From positions 1-64,000 of the IMG/VR virus record IMGVR_UViG_3300043411_000942: 64,000 nucleotides of DNA; one strand, written 5' to 3'. This document shows positions 50,701 to 63,145 of this stretch, piece by piece. A program made the translations under genes and the position numbers. The stretch's first letter is position 1. The number at the start of each line of letters is the position of its first letter. The notes beneath the pieces are model-generated. The model was not told the origin of the DNA, searched no databases, and saw nothing but the letters and a program-made list of their open reading frames with translations.

Positions 50701-53700
50701 CTCCAAGTCCGCTAGCTACCCCTCAAAGACCACTGAACTCACGGTTCTGCGAAAGTTTCCGTCCGCATTTACCTGGGGACGGATCGTGGCCTTCCATGAT
50801 CTGGGTCCCTACACGATCGCAGGGTTCCACCCTATCTCCTACACTGGGGAAAGCAAAACCAAGCATCTGGACGTCACGGAGTATCATGTGTGGGTGGACG
50901 GTAAGGATACCTGTACGGGAGCTAAGAGCTTGGAGGAAGCCATCCTGCTTGGGATTGGCATCCGCAACCTGGGTGCAAACAGTGGCCCCCACATGGCACG
51001 AGCTGCCTTCAAGATCCTTCAGTGACCCCCTACCAAAGGGTTTGCGAGCTGCACTTCAAGTTTCTTGAAGACGTTCACACCCTTCTCGTAACTGAGGCGG
51101 GAGCAGACCCAGACTCCAAGCAAACCTTTATGAGGTACATGCTGGACCCTACAGGGAACCAGGTAAAGGAGTACCGCTTCAAAGGGGCGTTTAGAGGCGG
51201 TGGTAAGCTCTGGATGGACAACAGTAAGTTCTGGATGGGCAACTCCCCCTACTGGGTCTCCTGCTACCCCGAGCACTACGCAGAGCTTGGTGCTCGTGTG
51301 GTCTACCTCAACGAAAAGATTGAGGCCCTCTACCTAGCGTATGCAACCAAGAGCCGAGAGCTAGTCCCATGAACAAAGCACGTCGTAGACTCGCCCGAGC
51401 ACGTAGGTACCGAGACCGGGCTTACATTCCACAAGGCTGGACCATGGGTGGAATGAGCCCAGAGTTCCCAACGAAGACGGAAGAGCAGGTAGCTCGATTC
51501 GTGGCGGAAGTCACGAGGCGAGCACGGAAGAACAAGGTCCTTGTTATCACTTGGAACGACCGCATGGTGCAAGACCTTCGGCGTCTCCTCCCCACAGACC
51601 TGACCACGGCATGGGATGTGGCGCTCCATGTGAAAGTAGTTTCCCTGTGGGATGCCTTTCACCAGAGCAATCTGGCCCTCAACTTTCGCGGGCACATCAC
51701 TGCCTTTCCTGCCTCTAACTTCAAGCTGAGAGCTTAAGCAGCTCTCGTCTCTTTCCGTAGGGTTCAACATGTACGAAGATTCCAGGCGACCTCAAGAGGT
51801 CAAAGCCTACACGAAGGAGATTCTTGCTCCTCTGATGTATGAAGCCTACATTAGCACCGCCTACAGTAGCACCGAGGGCAATTGGCCCGACTGGTCGGGC
51901 CTTCCTGAGGGTGTAAGGAAGTTTTGGCTGCTCAAAGCAAACAAGTCGATAATGTTCCTTGCGCTGAGTGGCACGAGTATCACGGACTCGGAGAAGCACG
52001 TAGCACTTCTAGCCTACCTCCTGTGGGATGGTAGCCTGTGGGAGGGCAGTGGCATTGATGCTTGGATGGCAGTGGCCAGACTTGTTCTAGCTAAGTTGAA
52101 AGGAGCCTAATCATGGACCCCAAGAACAGAGAGCACCTGAGAGCCCGTCTACTTCAAAAGAATCTCCCTAGCCTGACGGGCACCTGGGTCATTCGTGGGG
52201 AGGACGACAACGCAGACCTGGCTGGTCCTCACTATACGCCGAAACTTGGCAAGGTGAGGGGGACCTATGCGCAAGCAGTGGACTACGCCCTGTCCATTCC
52301 TAGCTTCGTTTCATGGGGTAGAGGGGGTTCGATCGACCTTGACCAAGAGGAGGAAGTCATTGACCTCGACAACCTTCAGGAAGCCCTTCGAGAGAAGCTC
52401 TTTCTTGAGCGTGACGCCCTGAACAGGCGCATCGACGAGATTGAGAATACCCTTCGGGCTATGCCACGAAAGGGGTAACAAGTGATTGAACCACAAGAGA
52501 ACGAAGAGGAAGCACTCGCTCTTGCCCTTCGACTTGGGCTTGAAGAGTGTGAGCGTCTGAGGGCCAAGTGTCAGGTGCTTGAAGACCGACTAGATTATCA
52601 AGACCAGCTTCGGTGGTTGGGAAGGGAACCTGTATGAGCGGTGTAGTTTACTTCAAGGACCGTACGGGGTACATCCGTAAGCTTCCTGCGGACGCCCCTG
52701 CTCGCTACAAGGGTAGTGGGGATATGTTCCTGGTAGGCGCTGCTAGCACGACGGATGTTCTAATACAGGTCTATGACAATGGGTGGATCGAGGGGTCTGT
52801 TATTGGACCCCCAACCCGCTATGTCTTCGAGCTAGTGTGGGAGTCCTGGGAAGGCGAGCAAGACCTCCGCTCTGCTCTCCTTGCATCGATAAAGTCCTCG
52901 GAGGTAGCCACCAAGCCGATCTTGACCCGAGTCTACCCGGTCTGCGACTCGACGAAGGCTGTAGTGACCCGATCTTGTAAGCTTTGACCTAGGCTCCTGG
53001 AAGAGTAAAGCCATGAATACACTTCAAGAACAACTTGCCCACCTACGCTCATTGAAGGACGGGTGGGATGAGGACCCCAGGGAGCGAGAACCCGCTCCAG
53101 CACCTACCCCAAAGGTCATCGAGGATGCTGAGCGGGTAGCTCTAGCCCTTGAGGCCTCAGGCTTCACGGATGTCACGCTCAGTGCTGACGTCATGGGTGG
53201 CGTTTGGCTGGGTGTGAGCCGAGGGTGGATTATCTTCCGCAACAAAGGCACGAGAATTGCCTTGGGTAAGGGATTTTGAACCTCAAGATCCTACAAATTC
53301 AAGTCTTGGTTAGGCCCCACCATCCCGACCTCGTAAGCTTTGACCTAGACGACGAGGTATCTAGCCCATTTCCTGTCTTTGGGGACCGAGCTTCTGTCTC
53401 GACTCTCGTTCAGGCAGGTTATGGGTTGGGTTCAGGAAAACTTCCCTGGGGTTCCTGTCCTTGTTGAAGAACACTCCCAGCTTGGCTCGAAAGAATCTGG
53501 TTAAAGGTTGACCCCGAGGTTACGTAGGATAGAATGAGGGTGAGACGAAGAGAACCTCTTCAATCTGCCCAACCTCCTCAGCTGGACCTAATCAACCTAG
53601 CTGAAAGCACTCGACGAGATGAGGGAGAAGTGATTAACTCTCTTGGCAAGCTTGGCGTAACCTTCTGGCGTAACCCGGAAAAGCTAGGCAAAAAAGCCCC

Positions 53701-55240: not shown

Positions 55241-56408
55241 TTCAACGACCCAAAATCCCTTTCCTACAGCAACGACCAGGGTCAGAAAATTTCTAGGGGA
55301 AATTTTTTGAGGGCCCAGAAAACTCAAAGAGCATGGCAACGAGTTTCCGATTCACTGCAACTGCAAATCGAAATGGCATGGGGGCCAAGAACCCTGGGGT
55401 ATACAACACCTGCACCTGCCACCCGATACAGTGGGGGGCTAAGAAGGCAGCCCGTCGAGCCCGGAGACGGATCTCCAAGCAAGTCATCCTAGAGGGGTGT
55501 GGAGAGTTGACATGAGGGGGCTGACTGCGATGGAGAGTGAAGTGCTTTCTGAAGACTCGCGAATCGAGGATGACGTCTACCTCAATCTTCTCGCAGAGCC
55601 GCTAGACCCGTCCGGTGGCGGCAACATGTCGAGCGAGATCGCAGCAACGCGTGAGAGGCTTACCGTGCGCGGTTGCCTGGAGCTATTTGTGTTTACCTAC
55701 TCAGACGGATCTGACGACTCGACTTGGCGCATCACCTCTCGTGGCCGTCTCGCTCTCCTTTGCCACCAGGCCCTGAAATGAACTACCTCGAAAAGTTGAA
55801 CGTACGGCTGGATGAGGCTCACTACGTGAGTTGCCCACAAGACTTCAAGGGTGACTTGCTACGAGCTTACGAAGTAGCTGACAACCCCAAGGCTGAGGCA
55901 GCGTTTTTCATCGCGTGCCATCATATGGCTTTGTTGGGAGGGCACAAGGACGTAGCCGTGCTCTTTGCGGATCTTGTGACCCTGATTAAGTAGATGAGGA
56001 AGCCCAAGCCACGTAAGAACAGAGCATACAGACGCAGAGGCAAGCGTGCGTGGTACGCCGCGATGAAAGCCACCGGGGAGTACCTGCACAGGAAGATGAG
56101 GGAGCCGAGCATCACACGCAGTATGTTCTCGATAACCCAGGTGACAGAAGTGGAGGCTACTCGATGACTACTTGGAAGACGACATGGTTGGCCAGGCTAC
56201 ACGTTCGGTTCCGTAAGTGGTTGCTGCCGAGGCTGCACCATCCCATCTGCCCCTTGTACCGGTACGAGTTCATCCGGATGCTAGAGCTATTCCACCATCG
56301 TAAGCCGCACACGCGATCCGCCCTGTGGGGTATGGAGGCTCAGTGTTTTTGTCCCAGAGCACTGAAGTAGTAGTTAAGTCTCCAGGCTCAAGCTACGTAG
56401 GACTCTAC

Positions 56409-56522
56409 ATGGGAAACTACGACGACTGGAAGTGCACGGACCCCCGCGACTCCGAGTACGATGGGGAGGATGAGGACCCCTCCTCCTTCGAGGTCGAGAA
56501 AGACTACTCCAATGAGGATTGA
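56409..56522 (+). CDS. 37-aa highly acidic peptide, paralog of 62313-62426
   Basis: MGNYDDWKCTDPRDSEYDGEDEDPSSFEVEKDYSNED; ATG 9 nt after promoter 56374-56399. Confidence 0.75.
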   Translation: MGNYDDWKCTDPRDSEYDGEDEDPSSFEVEKDYSNED

Positions 56523-58210
56523 ATGAAGCCCGTCTATATTTGTAAGAACCTGAATGGTGATCGGCACTTTTGGTGCATTGCCGTTCAAGACTGGGTTCGA
56601 GAGGGTCAGGGGCATACCCCTACTCCGTACACTCAAAAAGAGGCAGAAACCGTTATTGGTTACTGGGCTGATCACTGGACTGATCAACGAGGTGCTTACA
56701 TCCTCGTTGATGACTCTGCCCCTGTTGAGCAGACCGAGCAAGCTATCCTCGTTCATGCCATCAAAAAGAACATCGAAGACATGCGAGTACAGGTAGCCCG
56801 ACTGGAGGCTATTGCGGACCTTGCCCGAGAGCTTGCTCACGGAAGACCTGTACACACAGAGGATTGCAAAACGGTAACCCTCTCTGAGATGGGGCGAGTT
56901 GAGCACGCAGCCCGAGACTATCAGGGTACGGACACCTCGGGTTGGAAAGAATCCAACTGCGACTGTAAGGCTGGGGAAACTTACCGGACCTTGAAGACCC
57001 TATGCGGCTAAACTTCAAGGTAGGTTTGAGGCCCATGCAGAAGTACTCCGTGTGTCAAGGGTCCACTCTTAAGGTAGGGGAAGTCATTACTATTCATAGT
57101 AATGGTACGTCTTTCAAGGTCATTGTAACAGGCATCCAAACACATACCGGAGGGGGCCAAGTCTACTTTGTAGGCCTTCTCACGGATGTAGGTTAAGCCT
57201 CACCCCACCCACTCCGTAGGTCTCAGTATGAACCACTCTCTTGATAAGGTCGGCACCCCCTGTCCCGTTTGCAAGCGGACCATCTGCTTGTTTGAGTTCT
57301 CCGGAATGGCACCCTACACTTACTGCTCAGAGTTCTGCGACATAGCCTCAGAGGCTCAGGTCAAGGAGTTCCAGAACGCCTCCCCAGGGGATTTTTGCCT
57401 GTACCCCTGCTGTTCCTGTGGGGCAGCTCTTGAGGATGAGTGGGCCCCCACCTCCTGCTGTAGCTCCTGTGACAGGACCGCACGAGCTGAGAATGCAATG
57501 AACCTGCTCAAGCAAGCCAAGAGCTTGATTAAGAACAGGCTCACGAGCAAGAAGGCTTATGACCTTGTGAAGAAAATCGAACTGGCTCTGGAGAAGGGGA
57601 TATGAGCGGCCTTAAAACAACTGCGGAAGAGCGCGCCAGGTTTCGAGGCGCTTACGAGACCTGCGGATTCAGTGATATACGAGAGATGAAGATCCTTCGG
57701 GACCTGGAAACGTGTATTGCAGTACTACAGGAAATTCAGAACGCTTCTCACGATCGTAATGGCTACGACATGACACGAGCGATCGAAAAGGCTCAAGCTC
57801 TTCTAGCCTCCCGATGAAAGCCTCCCGATGAATCTTACCAAGCACCTAGTTAGAGACGAGTCTGAGTTTCTAGCTCTCTTCAAGGATTGGGAGCTAGACG
57901 ACATTGAAACCCTCCTTGGGGTAGAGTTCGCGTTCACGGATGGCACGTTCTACAGTGACCATTGCGAGGATGAGGACTACGAAGACTCCCGCACCATCGA
58001 CTACTCCAAGTACCGGAAGGATGAAGCGGCAAGATTCCCAGTGTCCTACCCTGCTATCGCTACCCTCCTGCAAGGTACGCAAGGCACGTCACTCAAGGCC
58101 ATGATGCTCGTCTACCCATCGGATTTTGGGGTTGTCCCAGCTGTCCGGAGTCTGACTCTTGCTGAATTGTGGGACGTGGTACCTTCAGCTCCTAGTACGG
58201 ACATGACCAA

Positions 58211-58819
58211 GTGACTTGGCTAAAGGCCTGGGACGAGATCATCCGCCGAAGGCAAAACGAAAATCGCATCCTAAAGTATGGTCTCAGCTTTGTATTGGAA
58301 AGCCCTAGAATGAGAGTCTTCAAACAACCTGTATTCCTCGGTTCCTCGAAAGAGGAAAGCCTTCGCATCAAGGCTAAGCTCCACTCGCGGCTCGATGACG
58401 CCATTACGGCTCTAGGGAGCCTCCAGCTCTCACGTAAAGGTCCTGACGAAACCAAGCTCGACGCTGAGGCTCAGGACGACCTGGACGACGCCCTACTTGA
58501 CATCCAGACAGCTCTTGAGTACTCCAATTTAAGCAAGCATGCAATGCTACCTGAACGACCGCCTCTCACCCACGTAGCCTGCATTGATATGGAGGGACGT
58601 GTCTGGAGCCTCCCACGCCCCTTTAGGCATCACCATGTTCTAAAGAACATGCATGACTACGGAGCTAAGGCTGAAGAATCTCCAAGTAGTCAAGGCTTCC
58701 TTGACGATAACGGGCGCTACCTTAGAAGGTCTCAGGCCCTTGTAAACGCTGATCTTAATGGTCAGATCAAGGGTGGGAAGATCATCGGGGGCATGCTCAC
58801 CTCAGAGGACCTCTGGTAG
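58211..58819 (+). CDS. Hypothetical protein whose C-terminal domain is paralogous to 60249-60536
   Basis: RPPLTHVACIDMEGRVWSLP.P.RH...GFLD.NG.YL.R.QALV...LTSEDLW in both. Confidence 0.7.
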   Translation: MTWLKAWDEIIRRRQNENRILKYGLSFVLESPRMRVFKQPVFLGSSKEESLRIKAKLHSRLDDAITALGSLQLSRKGPDETKLDAEAQDDLDDALLDIQTALEYSNLSKHAMLPERPPLTHVACIDMEGRVWSLPRPFRHHHVLKNMHDYGAKAEESPSSQGFLDDNGRYLRRSQALVNADLNGQIKGGKIIGGMLTSEDLW

Positions 58820-60248
58820 CAACATGCTCTTCAAAGTAACCTGCATTCGCGCGGCTAACGTCGAAGTGAAGCCCCAATACCGAAGCTCACTCAAGTGTTC
58901 AGCAGCCTCCCCTGAGGAAGCCGCTAAGGCCTCCTTCGCGTTGGAGATGGACTCCTCCGTGCGAGTGTATGAGGTTGTAGACATGGATATCCTTAGGGCG
59001 CACTACATTGAATGTGGGAAGCAAGTCTACGTAAAGGAGGTAGCTCCTAGAATCTGGTTAAGTCTCCACTGGCCCCCTACGTAGGGTTCAGTATGAAGAA
59101 GGTTAAAGACATGAAGCAGGCTCTCTCCAAGGATGAGGCCATGCTCGTCAAGTACCGAGACTATCAGATCACTTTGGCCTCTGGTGGTTCCGTGGAGAAC
59201 CTTAAGGCCTCCGAGGTAGGTGGGATTATCCACCAACTTGAGCAGTGCATCGAGAACAAGAAGAAGCTCCTGGCTGCTTCCCTGTAAGCCCAAACTAAAG
59301 GGAGGTTAAGCCATGGCGGAGAATGAAACACAGGAGGAGCTGGGAGTTCGACTGGCCAACGAGGTCATTGACGAGCTTATCCAGGAAGAGCTAGCGGAGG
59401 CGCTAGCTGCCCTCAACGAGTTGCCCAGCCTGTGGCAGGCCATCGGCACAACGGCCGCCCATCTGCGGAGGTGTAAGCACGGCACTCCCGGCTTCAAGAA
59501 GTGGGACGCCGTTCTGACCAAGTTCCAGAACGATGCGCACGAAAAGACCTCGCTGGTTCGCATGGCCCTCAGGACTGCCAAACGCGGAAAGAGAAACAAG
59601 TAATGACTACACGAGTTGAAACGGTCATGTACTTTGGGAACCAACACAATATGATTCCCGTGTCTACCTACACTAGCCCCAATGGAGCTACACACACCTT
59701 TCGTGGTGGTAACTCAGAGAAGGTCTTGAAGGGCGTCCAGGCGATTGAGGACCTTCGTCTGTCCAAGTTCGAGCTTCAGATTCTTCGTACCCTCCTTGAC
59801 AACCTCTAACATGTGTCAAGCTAAGCGAGACCTTGAGGTAATCACCCTCAAGGGGATGGTTCAATACCATATCGTTATGGGGAACACCCGAATTGCATCC
59901 ACAAGTGTATGGCTCTCCCAGTGGGGCCCCTTGTTGCCCACTGGGAAGCTTGCGTGGGGTTGCACTCCTGAGTGCTCATCCTTGACAACCTTTAGCTGAC
60001 AGATAAACCCATGGAACTTTACGGCTGGTACTCAGTAAAACAGAATGCGGTTAGTGGGTATTGCGTGTACCTCCTCGATGGGACAGACACTCAAGTCCAT
60101 GTAACCGTAGTTTGCCGCAACGAGGGGCACCCTAACACTCAAGGGTGCAACTGGGATGACTACCGGTTTGTAGGTAGGGTGGGTGAGATTGTCACTTCAT
60201 TTGTAAAGCAAGGATATGGAAGCTACACCTACAACGCCTTCAACTTCT

Positions 60249-60536
60249 ATGCGAAACGATAGACCGCCTCTCACCCACGTAGCCTGCATTGATATGGAGG
60301 GGCGTGTCTGGAGTCTCCCAGCTCCCTGTAGACATCGGGATGTTCTCCGAGTCATGCGAGGGTTTGGAGCCGAGCCTAAGGAGGACGAGGAGGTTGAGGG
60401 TCGGTTTGAGGGGTTCCTTGACCAGAACGGTCAATACCTCACCCGAGTTCAAGCCCTTGTGAGTGCTGAGCTGAATAGTCAAATCAAGAGAGGTAAGATC
60501 TCCGGGCGAGTTCTCACCTCAGAAGACCTCTGGTAA
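60249..60536 (+). CDS. Hypothetical protein, paralog of the 58544-58819 domain
   Basis: Same motifs; 52-nt near-identical DNA at 58557-58608 and 60262-60313. Confidence 0.7.
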   Translation: MRNDRPPLTHVACIDMEGRVWSLPAPCRHRDVLRVMRGFGAEPKEDEEVEGRFEGFLDQNGQYLTRVQALVSAELNSQIKRGKISGRVLTSEDLW

Positions 60537-61038
60537 CCCCATGCTAATTGATCTAGACGTAGACTACAGTGGGCTTCTGAGCCGTGTGGATACCGGACGA
60601 TACCTCCTACTCGACTACATGGCGAAACACTACCTGTTGGATACCAATGGGTGGGAGGATGTGGACCTGTTGTGGCCGGAGTACAACCTCCCTACGGGGG
60701 AGGAGCGGCTAAAGGCCATGATGGCTAGCATGCAAAACAACACTTGGTTCGAGACCTACGGCTCCTGCGACTCACCCGACCAGTTTCTAACCACGGAGAC
60801 TGCTCGGAGGATTCAGGACTCACCCTGGCCACTTCTGGTTGTGTTTCAACACATGACTCGGGAATCCTGTGGTGGTTACCGCTGGCACAAGAACGGACCT
60901 TATATCGGAGTGAAGAAGCCTCATTACGAGCACCTTGCGGACGAGCCTGAGATCACGGAGATCTACCAATTTCACATTTACCGGAAGCTGGAGCAAAAAG
61001 CTAGTTAAAGCTCCAGGACTGCTTCTCGTAAGATAGAA

Positions 61039-61258
61039 TGAGAGGCCCGACCTACGTAGGTCAACATCTAGTGAGGGTGGCCACCTCACTGAATCTCAAG
61101 TATGGACTCGGTCCTACTTGAGATTAAACCCTCAACGAACGGAAAGAAGAAGTATGTGTATAATCGTGCGGAGGGAGTCCGCTGTAGAGAGTAAGTAGCC
61201 CCCCCCACCACAGGGGTACAATCTCGGGGTAGAGTTCCAAAAGGGACTCTACCTTTTT
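61039..61258 (+). ncRNA. Candidate structured RNA of about 220 nt with its own promoter and terminator
   Basis: Promoter 61005-61030; consecutive hairpins at 61049-61062, 61070-61090 and 61092-61125; only a 27-codon ORF; terminator 61228-61258. Confidence 0.6.
61228..61258 (+). terminator. Intrinsic terminator
   Basis: ggtagagttcc-aaaa-gggactctacc-ttttt. Confidence 0.85.
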
Positions 61259-61306
61259 GGTTCATTTTGTGGTTAAGCTGACCCCTGCATTCTCGTAAGT
61301 ATAGGT

Positions 61307-61486
61307 ATGAGCATCCACAAAGAATCCAAGCTAGTTGATGGGTGTATCCCGAGTGGGCAGCCTTGCCCATTCTCGGATGAGTGTAAGTTCAAGGTCGAGC
61401 GATGCCCAACCCCAGAAAACCTTAAGCCCAATGATTACTCATGTGCGGCTGCAAGGCTGTTTGACCTCATAAGGAAAAAGACCTGA
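61307..61486 (+). CDS. 59-aa Cys-rich hypothetical protein (below the ORF-track cutoff)
   Basis: ATG 9 nt after promoter 61273-61297; the stop overlaps the next ATG. Confidence 0.65.
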   Translation: MSIHKESKLVDGCIPSGQPCPFSDECKFKVERCPTPENLKPNDYSCAAARLFDLIRKKT

Positions 61487-62312
61487 TGCGTATTGTTGAC
61501 TCAGATCCGTTGGACCGAGAATTGATGGGCGTTATCATTCTGAACAAGAGTGAGGCGATTCAGATGGTTCACGACCTGGTGAACATGCTAGCTGACGCTC
61601 CAGGTGCTGGGAGCACAAGTTACGCCATATATCGAGCAAAATCGATGCCGATGGCCATGAGTCGTGTCGCATTTGCAATCAAAGATTCTAGTTAAGTCTC
61701 TCCCCACACAACCCGTAGGAGTTAGCATGCAAATGAACATGAACATGAAGGGCACCTTGGTCTTCATGCGAGACCTGGAGGAGGACGGGTACTTCCTCTG
61801 CTTCTGGGAGGGCAATAAGGTCTTCCGAGAGTTTCGCGTCACCCGAGCAGACGAGAGTCGATTCTTCTTTGAGGAGTGGGACACCTGGGAGACAGTTGAG
61901 GCTGCCCCCACCACCATTCAGGAGGCTGAGCGGGTGGCGAAAGAGGTCTACGCGACAGGTGAGAGATAAGACCAGAGGTCTTGATACTAAGCCTTGCATT
62001 GGTAAGGGTTGAACCAGTGATCTTCGAGCCAGGCTACTACTGGATCAAAGGTCATGGTGTCTGTAAGTACTCCCATGCCACTGGAGGGCTAGCTTACAAC
62101 ACTGGGGAGCCTACTCACGTTGTGAACCCCTACCAGTTCGATTCAAACAAATTTGAAGGGAACCTCTACATCGAAACTTCGGACATCACCAGACCAGCGT
62201 CTGAAAAAGAAGCCAAGTCGTACAAGGCAGCAGTTCGGAGAAAGCTCACGTCTTCAGGCGTGAAAAGAAAAAACTAGTTAAGGCCGTTACCCCAAAGGAC
62301 GTAGGTCTCTAC

Positions 62313-62426
62313 ATGAACTACGATGACTGGAAAGCGACGGACCCCCGAGACACTGACCGCGACTATGACCTCGAAGGAGAGGAAGACCACTTCGAGATCG
62401 AAAAAGACTACTCTGGTGAAGACTGA
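62313..62426 (+). CDS. 37-aa highly acidic peptide, paralog of 56409-56522 (not in the ORF track)
   Basis: MNYDDWKATDPRDTDRDYDLEGEEDHFEIEKDYSGED; ATG 9 nt after promoter 62278-62303. Confidence 0.75.
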   Translation: MNYDDWKATDPRDTDRDYDLEGEEDHFEIEKDYSGED

Positions 62427-62534
62427 TTCCGTGTGACCGTGTACTCCTGGGATACCCAACAGGTGACGGCTCTGCCTTAGGGAGCGTTAACAACGTCTAT
62501 TCAACCAACCCGGCACGGGTGTAGAGTATTGGGT

Positions 62535-62990
62535 AAGTGCTGACACCTCGGAAAGACGGGGAAATTTCTTAACTCCTACTGGCGAGACACGTTAAGTGTC
62601 GGGACACATGTGAACTAGAGTCACAGAACCAACGTAGGAGCTGTAGTCAACCTAGCAAGTCAAAACGTAGACTCCGGAAGGTAGCCAACCCTCTTCGGAC
62701 GAGTCAGACCCAAGTAGGATGGCGAAGGGTAAAGCCGAGAGGCGAGCAAAACCCATGCCCCGAATTTGCTGCGGGGCGCTTTTCTTACTTTGAGAGTTGA
62801 AATGCACATCCGTGACTGGGTTGCCGTAACCTGAGGGTCTCATCCTTCCTCTAGCCTCGGCAATTCGGAGCACACCCACAGGCCTGATGAACCTGGACGG
62901 TTCGGTTCAAACCCGTGTGTAATGGGACACTAGCTCCCACGTCATGTGCTAGGGTTACGGGTGTGCTTTTCAACTTTCCAAGTAACTACA
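62535..62990 (+). ncRNA. Large multi-domain structured RNA candidate (may be two or three separate RNAs)
   Basis: No credible plus-strand ORF. Junction 62573-62640; stem of about 30 bp pairing 62785-62816 with 62954-62985 and enclosing a multibranch core with a T-loop-like GGTTCAAACCC. Confidence 0.65.
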
Positions 62991-63005
62991 AGCACTTTTC
63001 TTCTT

Positions 63006-63112
63006 CATAGGTCTGGAAGCCAAGCGGTCTAGTTTGAGGAGACTGATCCTCTCTGTGAACTAGGACGTGGGGTCAACGCACGGGAAAACCTAGCCCTGCT
63101 TCCAGACCTATG
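63006..63112 (+). ncRNA. Structured RNA candidate closed by a perfect 15-bp stem
   Basis: cataggtctggaagc pairs with gcttccagacctatg; internal helices ctagtt/aactag, gagga/tcctc and cgtg/cacg. Confidence 0.6.
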
Positions 63113-63145
63113 GGGTAGGGGACTTCTTAACTACCGAGGATAAAA

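What the first reader, a model, noticed from the sequence alone, without database searches (positions are those of the whole stretch)
61005..61258. Self-contained promoter-to-terminator unit that appears to encode an RNA of about 220 nt
Seen: a consensus promoter, then from the predicted +1 a cloverleaf-like set of three adjacent hairpins, possibly closed by tgag..gg/cc.tca (61039-61134). A purine-rich linker, a further hairpin gcgga/tccgc and a clean intrinsic terminator follow, and the next gene has its own promoter (61273). The only ORF from +1 is 27 codons and buried in structure. Inference: an early small regulatory or decoy RNA.
Basis: partly seen in the sequence, partly recalled or inferred. 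Interest (0 to 1): 0.68.

Follow-up and report, generated by a model that had tools for sequence, protein, structure and literature searches.

The report
Duplicated small RNA gene, jumbo phage
The flagged stretch is a real stand-alone gene for a folded, non-protein-coding RNA of about 220 bases in a giant uncultivated water and wastewater phage; a second copy lies elsewhere in the genome, it matches no known RNA family, and what it does is still unknown.

Summary
Positions 61004-61258 (+) carry a promoter of the phage's own class (GTTAA-N16-19-CGTARG: 20 in the window, 0.15 expected), several hairpins (fold z = -4.3) and a strong intrinsic terminator. The next gene has its own promoter.

The window is the start of a 233-kb fragment of a roughly 380-kb jumbo phage. 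A paralogue lies at 83.07-83.23 kb (-) of the same record. A sister phage (380 kb) has both copies, and contigs from other samples carry each copy.

Two blocks of 18 and 25 nt are invariant. The other helices keep their pairing while the sequence changes. Every small ORF differs in frame, length or sequence between copies, so this is an RNA gene, not a peptide gene.

The first of the three "cloverleaf" hairpins is only the remnant of an older promoter, and the closing stem is not conserved.

There is no match in Rfam, ARAGORN, remoter relatives or bacterial genomes. Expression could not be shown. My best reading is a trans-acting structured sRNA whose invariant hairpins are recognition sites for a partner; that mechanism is inferred. 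It is a new family of a known kind, of moderate interest.

The parts
61004..61032 (+). Promoter of the phage's own class (GTTAAA, 17 nt, CGTAAG). The predicted +1 is at about 61038-61040.
   Evidence: Pattern census: 20 in the window against 0.15 expected and 63 in the record, 45 of them with ATG about 7 nt downstream.
61050..61063 (+). It is a relic of the ancestral promoter -10 box and is transcribed only in this copy.
   Evidence: It aligns with the untranscribed promoter (ACGTAGGT / CGTAAGT) of the other three copies. Homology to the sister phage starts at 61054.
61069..61091 (+). Hairpin P1. Its loop GUGGCCA contains a conserved GGCC palindrome.
   Evidence: Present in every copy by modular folding. 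It shows compensatory and wobble changes.
61092..61125 (+). Long hairpin P2. Its apex, 61100-61117 (GTATGGACTCGGTCCTAC), is invariant block 1.
   Evidence: The block is invariant in all copies. The outer stem shows U-A to C-G and A-U to G-C changes.
61126..61158 (+). Purine-rich linker, variable in sequence and length. A short stem (A/G)CGA...UCGU (P2b) closes it next to P3.
   Evidence: Alignments. Pairs 76-79 with 109-112 are 100% paired.
61159..61183 (+). Invariant block 2, TATAATCGT + GCGGA-GGGAG-TCCGC + T. It contains hairpin P3 (61168-61182).
   Evidence: All 25 nt are identical in every copy found.
61187..61225 (+). Its apical loop is a poly-C tract.
   Evidence: The same hairpin forms at the same place with almost entirely different sequence in the B-type copies. 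Three pairs change on both sides. The poly-C loop varies from C6 to C9 among samples.
61226..61258 (+). Intrinsic terminator: 13-bp stem, AAAA loop, U-run.
   Evidence: Terminator scan and folds.
61038..61121 (+). 27-codon ORF starting at the predicted +1. It is not conserved.
   Evidence: The equivalent ORFs are 11 aa (A2) and 25 aa (B), read in other frames.
61154..61198 (+). Micro-ORF of 14 codons (MCIIVRRESAVESK) that reads through invariant block 2. It is the only reading frame kept in all copies and is treated as a rival explanation.
   Evidence: In variant B3 its ATG is GTG.
61272..61299 (+). Promoter of the next gene. That gene's leaderless ATG is at 61307, so it does not belong to the RNA unit.

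Best explanation
Positions 61004-61258 are an independent gene for a structured non-coding RNA of about 220 nt.

**How the unit is built.** It is transcribed from one of the phage's own promoters and ended by an intrinsic terminator. The RNA is a string of hairpins: P1, P2, a variable linker closed by a short stem, P3 and P4.

**How it most likely works (inferred).** Two parts are frozen in sequence: the apex of P2, and the AU-rich flank plus P3. I read these as the functional recognition surfaces. The other helices act as a scaffold, free to change sequence as long as they stay paired. The RNA most likely acts in trans during infection by being bound at the two invariant hairpins by a phage or host protein, or by another RNA. 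That would make it an RNP component, a sponge or a decoy.

**Copy number and mobility.** The gene exists in two diverged copies per genome and moves as a promoter-to-terminator cassette within the phage's mosaic region of small genes.

**Shown versus inferred.** Shown: the unit's anatomy, its duplication, its conservation, the structure-preserving substitutions and the lack of a conserved ORF. Inferred: transcription itself, its timing, action in trans and the protein-binding mode.
For: - **Anatomy:** promoter class is 20 observed against 0.15 expected. Terminator found by the scan. Fold z = -4.27.
- **Copies:** a paralogue at G000 83071-83234 (-), and both copies again in the 380-kb sister phage G001.
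- **Copy A in other samples:** 7 further contigs carry it nearly unchanged, varying only in the poly-C loop length of P4.
- **Local conservation of copy B:** in a strain whose flanking gene is 86.8% identical, the RNA core is 97.6% identical.
- **Structure-preserving change:** 91% of cells are paired against 31-43% in slid controls, and 8 pairs change on both sides. P4 and the outer P2 and P1 stems keep pairing with different sequence. Substitutions among B, B2 and B3 are either unpaired or keep or improve a pair: A.C to A-U in P4, and A-U to G.U in P5.
- **Strand:** G.U pairs on the + strand fit the strand given by the promoter and terminator.
- **No conserved peptide:** the distance between the two invariant blocks differs modulo 3, and the 27-aa and 30-aa ORFs are truncated to 11 aa in A2.
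- **Promoter class can make ncRNA:** an ATG-less member lies about 240 nt upstream of tRNA-Lys, on the same strand.
- **Self-contained module:** the cassette sits in different neighbourhoods in the two phages.
Against: - No transcript evidence. The four RNA-library runs that hold parts of the region have contigs on neighbouring genes (60198-60628 and 61457-61696) but none on the unit. Contigs cannot prove absence.
- Only three really different sequence types exist (A, A2, B), so the covariation is suggestive and not statistically secure.
- No partner, target or related known family was identified.
- The invariant block also keeps a 13-18-codon reading frame open in all copies.
- The reverse strand folds almost as well (z = -3.72), as expected for hairpins.
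Confidence: 0.5

Rival explanations
1. It is a base-pairing (antisense) regulatory sRNA. The single-stranded AU-rich stretch in front of P3 (AUG..UAUAAUCGU), or another invariant stretch, is a seed that pairs with host or phage mRNAs. The terminator hairpin and U-tail serve as a chaperone (Hfq-type) binding module.
For: It has the stand-alone promoter-to-terminator architecture with a U-tail. The invariant stretch is partly unpaired in most folds. Both paralogues share it.
Against: Complementary matches in the phage record are at chance level, at most 11 nt and not at gene starts. Most invariant bases lie inside hairpins, not in open seeds. The host is unknown, so host targets could not be scanned.
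Confidence: 0.2
2. It is an mRNA, or a dual-function RNA, for a micro-peptide M-(C/N)-I-I-V-R-R-E-S-A... of 13-18 residues (61154-61198). The purine-rich linker acts as a weak ribosome-binding site. The peptide could be functional itself, or serve as a leader peptide whose translation melts P3 and P4 and modulates the terminator.
For: This start codon and frame are kept in all copies, and the purine-rich linker lies just upstream. SD-like motifs are used by larger genes of this phage: 29% against 16% background.
Against: - There is no synonymous change at all in the 9 shared codons, although the copies differ by about 25% elsewhere. That pattern indicates nucleotide-level constraint, not protein-level constraint.
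- The C-terminal tails differ in length and sequence: AVESK, AVRE and ACRGTLAF.
- The SD-like purines differ in sequence and spacing between copies.
- ATG is GTG in B3, which equally preserves a base pair.
- The 90-nt structured region upstream is as conserved as the ORF.
- Protein genes served by this promoter class are typically leaderless.
Confidence: 0.1
3. It is a cis-acting element and not a trans-acting RNA. One version is a nascent-RNA module that modifies the transcribing polymerase, as put-type antitermination does. Another is simply a terminator/insulator and recombination cassette between early genes, like the promoter-stem-loop linkers of T4-type phages. A third is a DNA-level protein-binding site.
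For: It lies directly behind a promoter and in front of a terminator, inside a mosaic region. One recombination breakpoint sits in the promoter -10 box. The hairpins are also palindromes in DNA, and the reverse strand folds with z = -3.72.
Against: Each downstream gene has its own promoter. Only two copies exist per genome, against about 60 promoters. A 160-nt multi-helix core with compensatory changes, and G.U pairs valid on one strand only, is more than an insulator or operator needs.
Confidence: 0.1
4. It is a leaderless mRNA for the 27-residue peptide that starts at the predicted +1 (61038-61121).
For: The ATG lies 5 nt after the -10-like box. That is close to the 7-nt spacing used by 45 of 63 promoters of the class, which start leaderless ORFs.
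Against: The 5' part of this ORF is specific to this copy; it is new promoter plus promoter relic. The corresponding ORFs are 11 aa in A2 and 25 aa in another frame in B. The nucleotide sequence is conserved across the frame changes.
Confidence: 0.03

Closest known systems
Stand-alone sRNA genes of virulent phages. Few have been predicted and their roles are 'less obvious' (phiKZ dRNA-seq study, PMC8244752). From my own knowledge, the small stable RNAs C and D of phage T4 are comparable.
   Same: A short non-coding transcription unit with its own promoter and intrinsic terminator in a lytic-type, large phage genome. It is structured and its function is unknown.
   Different: There is no sequence or Rfam relationship. 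It is not in the tRNA cluster. It is present as two diverged paralogues. It is driven by a phage-specific promoter class that otherwise makes leaderless mRNAs.
RNA anti-CRISPRs (Racr, solitary repeat units; PMC10651486) and viral crRNA-like RNAs (bioRxiv 10.1101/2024.10.29.618823).
   Same: A phage-encoded small RNA with its own promoter. It contains a 25-nt invariant block with the size and shape of a CRISPR repeat handle: an AU-rich flank, a 5-bp stem, a 5-nt loop and a trailing U.
   Different: The block was never found as an array. The 17-mer and 19-mer occur once per locus in metagenome and genome contigs. No CRISPR array is present in the phage record. The RNA is much longer and has several hairpins.
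Hfq-type base-pairing sRNAs of bacteria and prophages.
   Same: Length of about 200 nt, with a Rho-independent terminator carrying a U-tail at the 3' end and an AU-rich stretch next to a hairpin.
   Different: No seed-target pairing was found in the phage. The conservation is concentrated in hairpins, not in an open seed. The host and its chaperones are unknown.
put antiterminator RNAs of phage HK022 (from my own knowledge).
   Same: Stem-loops transcribed immediately downstream of a phage promoter.
   Different: The unit ends at a strong terminator, and the following genes have their own promoters. It is three times longer. No cis effect could be tested.

Membership tests
Any Rfam 15 family | Covariance-model score at or above the family's gathering threshold. 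| tested here: not met
   There were 0 hits at gathering level over the whole window. With E up to 10 on 60950-61320, only two chance hits appeared: mir-583 on the terminator, and RT-11 at 10.9 bits against a threshold of 143.5.
tRNA / tmRNA / tRNA-like cloverleaf | A cloverleaf with acceptor stem, anticodon arm and T-arm that ARAGORN can recognise, and a closing stem conserved in homologues. | tested here: not met
   ARAGORN found 0 genes in the window and in the loci of both copies. The first hairpin and closing stem are absent from the other copies.
Racr / solitary CRISPR repeat unit | The RNA mimics the repeat of a CRISPR array present in host genomes. | tested here: inconclusive
   The P3 17-mer and 19-mer match only single, scattered sites consistent with chance, never arrays. 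Only exact matches could be scanned, and the host is unknown.
Racr / solitary CRISPR repeat unit | Binding to Cas proteins and inhibition of CRISPR immunity. | not testable with these tools
   This needs the host and an experiment.
6S RNA | A long, largely closed rod with a central open-promoter-like bubble. | tested here: not met
   Every copy folds as a string of separate hairpins, with no end-to-end rod. There was no Rfam 6S hit.
Hfq-dependent base-pairing sRNA | An intrinsic terminator with a U-tail, plus a conserved single-stranded seed complementary to targets. | tested here: inconclusive
   The terminator and U-tail are present. No above-chance complementarity was found in the phage record. 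Host targets could not be tested.
Leader-peptide transcription attenuator | A short translated ORF, mutually exclusive terminator and antiterminator hairpins, and a regulated gene that depends on read-through. | tested here: not met
   A micro-ORF is kept. However, no conserved antiterminator alternative was seen, and the downstream gene has its own promoter in all copies.
Leaderless small-protein gene of this phage | ATG about 7 nt after CGTAGG, and an ORF conserved in homologues. | tested here: not met
   The ATG lies at 5 nt (A), 4 nt (B) and 7 nt (A2). The ORFs of 27, 25 and 11 aa are in different frames and unrelated.

The most novel reading that the evidence does not exclude
The RNA could be a phage-made molecular decoy. 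Its 25-nt invariant block (AU-rich flank, 5-bp stem, GGGAG loop, trailing U) and the invariant P2 apex would be handles copied from, or evolved to fit, a host RNA-binding machine. One candidate is a CRISPR-Cas or other RNA-guided defence effector, in the Racr/crRNA-like mode. Another is the translation apparatus: the loop carries an SD-like GGAG in a phage whose early mRNAs are leaderless. Two diverged copies would then titrate that machine early in infection. The two invariant blocks are also mutually complementary (GGACUC / GAGUCC), and P1 carries a palindromic GGCC loop, so a conformational switch or A-B dimer is possible.
Probability: 0.1. Interest if true: 0.75.

Novelty: new member of a known kind. 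Interest (0 to 1): 0.45.

Why it matters
Non-coding RNA genes of virulent and jumbo phages are almost uncharted, and very few have a known role. This one is well delimited, duplicated and under visible purifying selection. It belongs to a phage seen in runs labelled freshwater, groundwater, wastewater, sludge and runoff across many studies.

That gives a clean candidate for experiments: northern blot, TSS mapping, pull-down and deletion of both copies. It is also a seed alignment for a new RNA family.

The context may be the larger prize. The phage drives dozens of small genes from one strict promoter whose start site coincides with the ATG. That implies a mostly leaderless early programme, in which a 220-nt untranslated, highly structured transcript stands out.

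Tried and rejected
**Known families and relatives**
- Rfam at gathering level and at permissive thresholds gave nothing. ARAGORN gave nothing.
- blastn of the region against INPHARED phages found no match.

**Searches for more homologues**
- Exact-block scans of IMG/VR found only the sister phage.
- The metagenome scan with the P3 17-mer gave over 120 loci, all chance hits without the flanks or block 1. That scan was poorly chosen because the word was too short.
- Genome contigs: the two-hairpin composite pattern gave 0 hits, and the 19-mer gave 12 scattered chance hits.
- Covariance model R1 found no copy in three remoter IMG/VR relatives, in the 485-kb uncultured phage LR745208.1, in Tunturiibacter phage Tunturi_5, in 34 contigs with single promoter-pattern hits, or in Logan contigs with 66-68% homologues of the upstream gene. 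Its third weak hit in the own record (13.4 bits) is a chance match.
- A protein-database search with the spurious antisense ORF, used as a back door to RNA homologues, found only the same strain.
- Distant homologues of the gene flanking copy B turned out to be bacterial chromosomal genes without the RNA.

**Expression and targets**
- Four runs were laid on the stretch: three on record as RNA libraries and one only guessed to be RNA. Their contigs lie on neighbouring genes and none on the unit, so this is inconclusive.
- The target search by complementarity in the phage record stayed at chance level.

**Readings rejected**
- tRNA-like cloverleaf, 27-aa and 30-aa peptides, 6S-like rod, riboswitch or leader of the next gene (which has its own promoter), and a CRISPR array in the phage.

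Full report
**1. Where we are.** The window is bases 1-64000 of a 232,937-bp IMG/VR virus record (G000, CheckV completeness 49%). Its close relative G001 (IMGVR_UViG_3300020049_006032) is 379,936 bp with direct terminal repeats and has a 99% identical helicase. The remoter helicase relatives are a 485-kb uncultured phage and the 309-kb Tunturiibacter (Acidobacteriota) phage Tunturi_5, at about 50% identity. This is therefore an uncultivated jumbo phage. Public runs labelled freshwater, groundwater, wastewater, sludge, runoff and aquatic metagenomes hold 60-100% of the sampled words of the stretch 59000-63000; the 20 holding rows come from 15 studies.

**2. The observation.**

- **Promoter.** The promoter at 61004-61032 is not sigma-70-like; the scan did not flag it. 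It is one of a strict phage-specific class, GTTAAG, 17 nt, CGTAGG. The looser pattern GTTAA-N16-19-CGTARG occurs 20 times in the window against 0.15 expected. A slightly wider pattern occurs 63 times in the record.
- **Leaderless context.** In 45 of those 63 sites an ATG follows about 7 nt after GTAGG and opens an ORF, typically of 37-250 codons. This is the signature of leaderless mRNAs; that reading is an inference, since no TSS data exist.
- **ATG-less members.** The sites without an ATG include one about 240 nt upstream of tRNA-Lys(UUU) at G000 72353-72426. Several others lie in the 127-146 kb part of the record, where sequences that look like tRNA arms were seen but not checked with ARAGORN. 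The class may therefore also serve non-coding genes.
- **Fold and terminator.** The 225 nt from the predicted +1 fold to -85.5 kcal/mol, z = -4.27. The terminator at 61226-61255 is the only strong one in 58-64 kb. The next gene's promoter is at 61272-61299, with a leaderless ATG at 61307.

**3. Relatives.**
- **Paralogue.** A paralogue (copy B) lies at G000 83071-83234 on the minus strand. It is 74% identical over the core and has the same kind of promoter and its own terminator.
- **Sister phage.** G001 has both copies: A2 at 66303-66473 (+) and B2 at 83854-84017 (-).
- **Other samples, copy A.** Seven further contigs from other samples carry copy A almost unchanged. The only variation is the length of the poly-C run in the P4 loop, C6 to C9.
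- **Other samples, copy B.** Logan contigs from another study carry a third B variant, B3. There the RNA core is 97.6% identical to B, while the upstream protein gene is 86.8% identical and the downstream spacer 88.7%.
- **Elsewhere.** Nothing was found anywhere else; see Tried and rejected.

**4. Anatomy, from comparing the types A, A2, B, B2 and B3.**

The layout below comes from the alignments and folds.
- P1 is a short hairpin with a conserved GGCC-containing loop (61069-61091).
- P2 is a long hairpin whose 18-nt apex, GTATGGACTCGGTCCTAC, is invariant (61092-61125).
- A purine-rich linker follows, variable in sequence and length, closed by a short stem (A/G)CGA...UCGU.
- Next comes a 25-nt invariant block, TATAATCGT + GCGGA-GGGAG-TCCGC + T, which contains P3 (61159-61183).
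- P4 is a long hairpin (61187-61225). Its sequence is almost entirely different between the A and B types, but it forms at the same place.
- The B types have an extra hairpin before the terminator.

On the model-based alignment, 91% of cells are paired against 31-43% when partners are slid by 1-3 columns, and 8 pairs change on both sides. Substitutions among B, B2 and B3 are either unpaired or keep or improve a pair: A.C to A-U in P4, and A-U to G.U in P5. Several G.U pairs exist only on the + strand, which agrees with the strand set by the promoter and terminator. With only three really different types, this evidence is good but not statistically secure.

**5. Corrections to the cloverleaf.**

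Homology between G000 and G001 begins at 61054, inside that box. Copy A has therefore acquired a new promoter 26 nt further upstream. That new promoter resembles the one at 53500. Copy A now transcribes the relic of its old promoter. The proposed closing stem uses this copy-specific 5' end and is not conserved.

**6. Coding potential.**
- **27-aa ORF.** The ORF at +1 corresponds to an 11-aa ORF in A2 and to a 25-aa ORF in another frame in B.
- **30-aa ORF.** The ORF starting in P2 is cut to 11 aa in A2 by a 2-nt insertion, and it reads block 2 in a different frame in A than in B. The distance between the two blocks is 58, 64 or 57 nt in the different copies.
- **Micro-ORF.** One frame, M-(C/N)-IIVRRESA... 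(61154-61198), stays open in all copies. However, its nine shared codons show no synonymous change although the copies differ by about 25% elsewhere. Its tails differ, and its start is GTG in B3, a change that also preserves a base pair. I keep it as a minor rival.
- **Antisense ORF.** The antisense ORF that one gene caller predicted has no relatives.

**7. Evolutionary context.**

The two phages have the cassette in different neighbourhoods. In G001 it follows a conserved structured element that in G000 lies at 63001-63110. In G000 it sits 2 kb further left, beside a 4.7-kb stretch (about 56.3-61.05 kb) that has no counterpart in the 19-kb syntenic segment of G001 that I compared. Relatives with 66-68% identical copies of the upstream gene use the same promoter class but lack the RNA at that position. 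The gene therefore behaves as a self-contained movable module in a mosaic region of small genes, with breakpoints in the shared promoter boxes.

**8. Function.**

Nothing identifies a partner.
- Complementarity to the phage record is at chance level.
- Neither invariant block was found in bacterial genomes or CRISPR arrays beyond chance, and the phage record has no CRISPR array.
- Contigs from the runs laid on the stretch (three on record as RNA libraries) lie on neighbouring genes but not on the unit, which is inconclusive.

The pattern of conservation is two frozen hairpin apexes within helices that are free to covary. That points to recognition of specific hairpins, which is typical of protein-binding or decoy RNAs, rather than to an open antisense seed. 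I therefore rank a trans-acting structured RNA bound at these hairpins first (0.5) and a base-pairing sRNA second (0.2). The micro-peptide and cis-acting readings come next (0.1 each), and the 27-aa leaderless peptide last (0.03).

Two further observations are worth testing. The invariant blocks are mutually complementary over 6-7 nt (GGACUC with GAGUCC), although I estimate about a 6% chance of that arising by accident. The P1 loop is palindromic, which would allow a kissing dimer.

**9. Verdict.**

This is a real, well-delimited, duplicated non-coding RNA gene, and a new family with no match in Rfam. It is a new member of the known kind 'phage-encoded small RNA'. Its function is unknown and its expression is unproven. 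Interest is moderate.

Noticed in passing
Whole window (for example 57192, 59057, 61272, 61691, 62277, 63373, 63702) and G000 up to about 150 kb: A strict phage promoter, GTTAAG-N17-CGTAGG, with ATG about 7 nt downstream at 45 of 63 sites. This implies a largely leaderless programme for dozens of small genes. Larger genes show SD-like motifs instead: 29% against 16% background. The phiKZ dRNA-seq study reported no leaderless phage transcripts (PMC8244752), so this differs from the best-studied jumbo phage.
   Followed up: partly
Window 62430-63145, especially 63005-63115: A stretch of about 700 nt without a convincing ORF, with fold z = -3.6. Its 3' end is a closed multi-branch structure (closing stem GGUCUGGAAGC / GCUUCCAGACC, z = -4.9). 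That structure is conserved in G001, where it lies directly upstream of RNA copy A2. It starts like a type-II tRNA D-arm, but ARAGORN and Rfam find nothing. It may be a second non-coding RNA or a tRNA relic.
   Followed up: partly
G000 83071-83234 (-), outside the window (L129 1501-1664): The paralogous RNA gene (copy B). It has its own promoter, one extra hairpin and a different terminator.
   Followed up: yes
Window 61199-61206: The poly-C run in the P4 loop differs in length among samples, from C6 to C9. This could be homopolymer slippage or assembly noise, and it is confined to the loop.
   Followed up: partly
Window 61050-61063; also G000 about 67.2 kb and 77.7 kb: Several promoters extend the -10 box into a perfect palindrome, (A)CCTACGTAGG(T). 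This could be the binding site of a dimeric regulator.
   Followed up: no
Window 56319-61053 and 61261-61674, compared with G001 56-75 kb: Mosaic rearrangement between two phages whose helicases are 99% identical. It includes a 4.7-kb stretch without counterpart in the compared G001 segment, and relocation of the RNA cassette. One junction lies in a promoter -10 box.
   Followed up: partly
Window 58557-58596 and 60262-60301; G000 212440-212920: An exact 40-nt repeat occurs 1705 nt apart inside two genes that carry the T4_Y16D domain. A 240-nt tandem duplication lies far downstream in the record.
   Followed up: no
Window 61100-61117 against 61173-61180: The two invariant blocks are complementary to each other (GGACUC with GAGUCC, plus a U.G pair). 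This offers an alternative long-range pairing or an intermolecular A-B contact. The P1 loop contains a GGCC palindrome.
   Followed up: no
Window 59000-63000 in public runs: Contigs 99-100% identical to neighbouring small genes (60198-60628 and 61457-61696) occur in metatranscriptome libraries labelled mosquito, marine and 'metagenome'. This could be transcription of these genes or carried-over DNA; the two cannot be told apart here.
   Followed up: partly
G000 72084-72426 (L160): An ATG-less promoter of the same class lies about 240 nt upstream of tRNA-Lys(UUU). The 240-nt leader was not examined.
   Followed up: no
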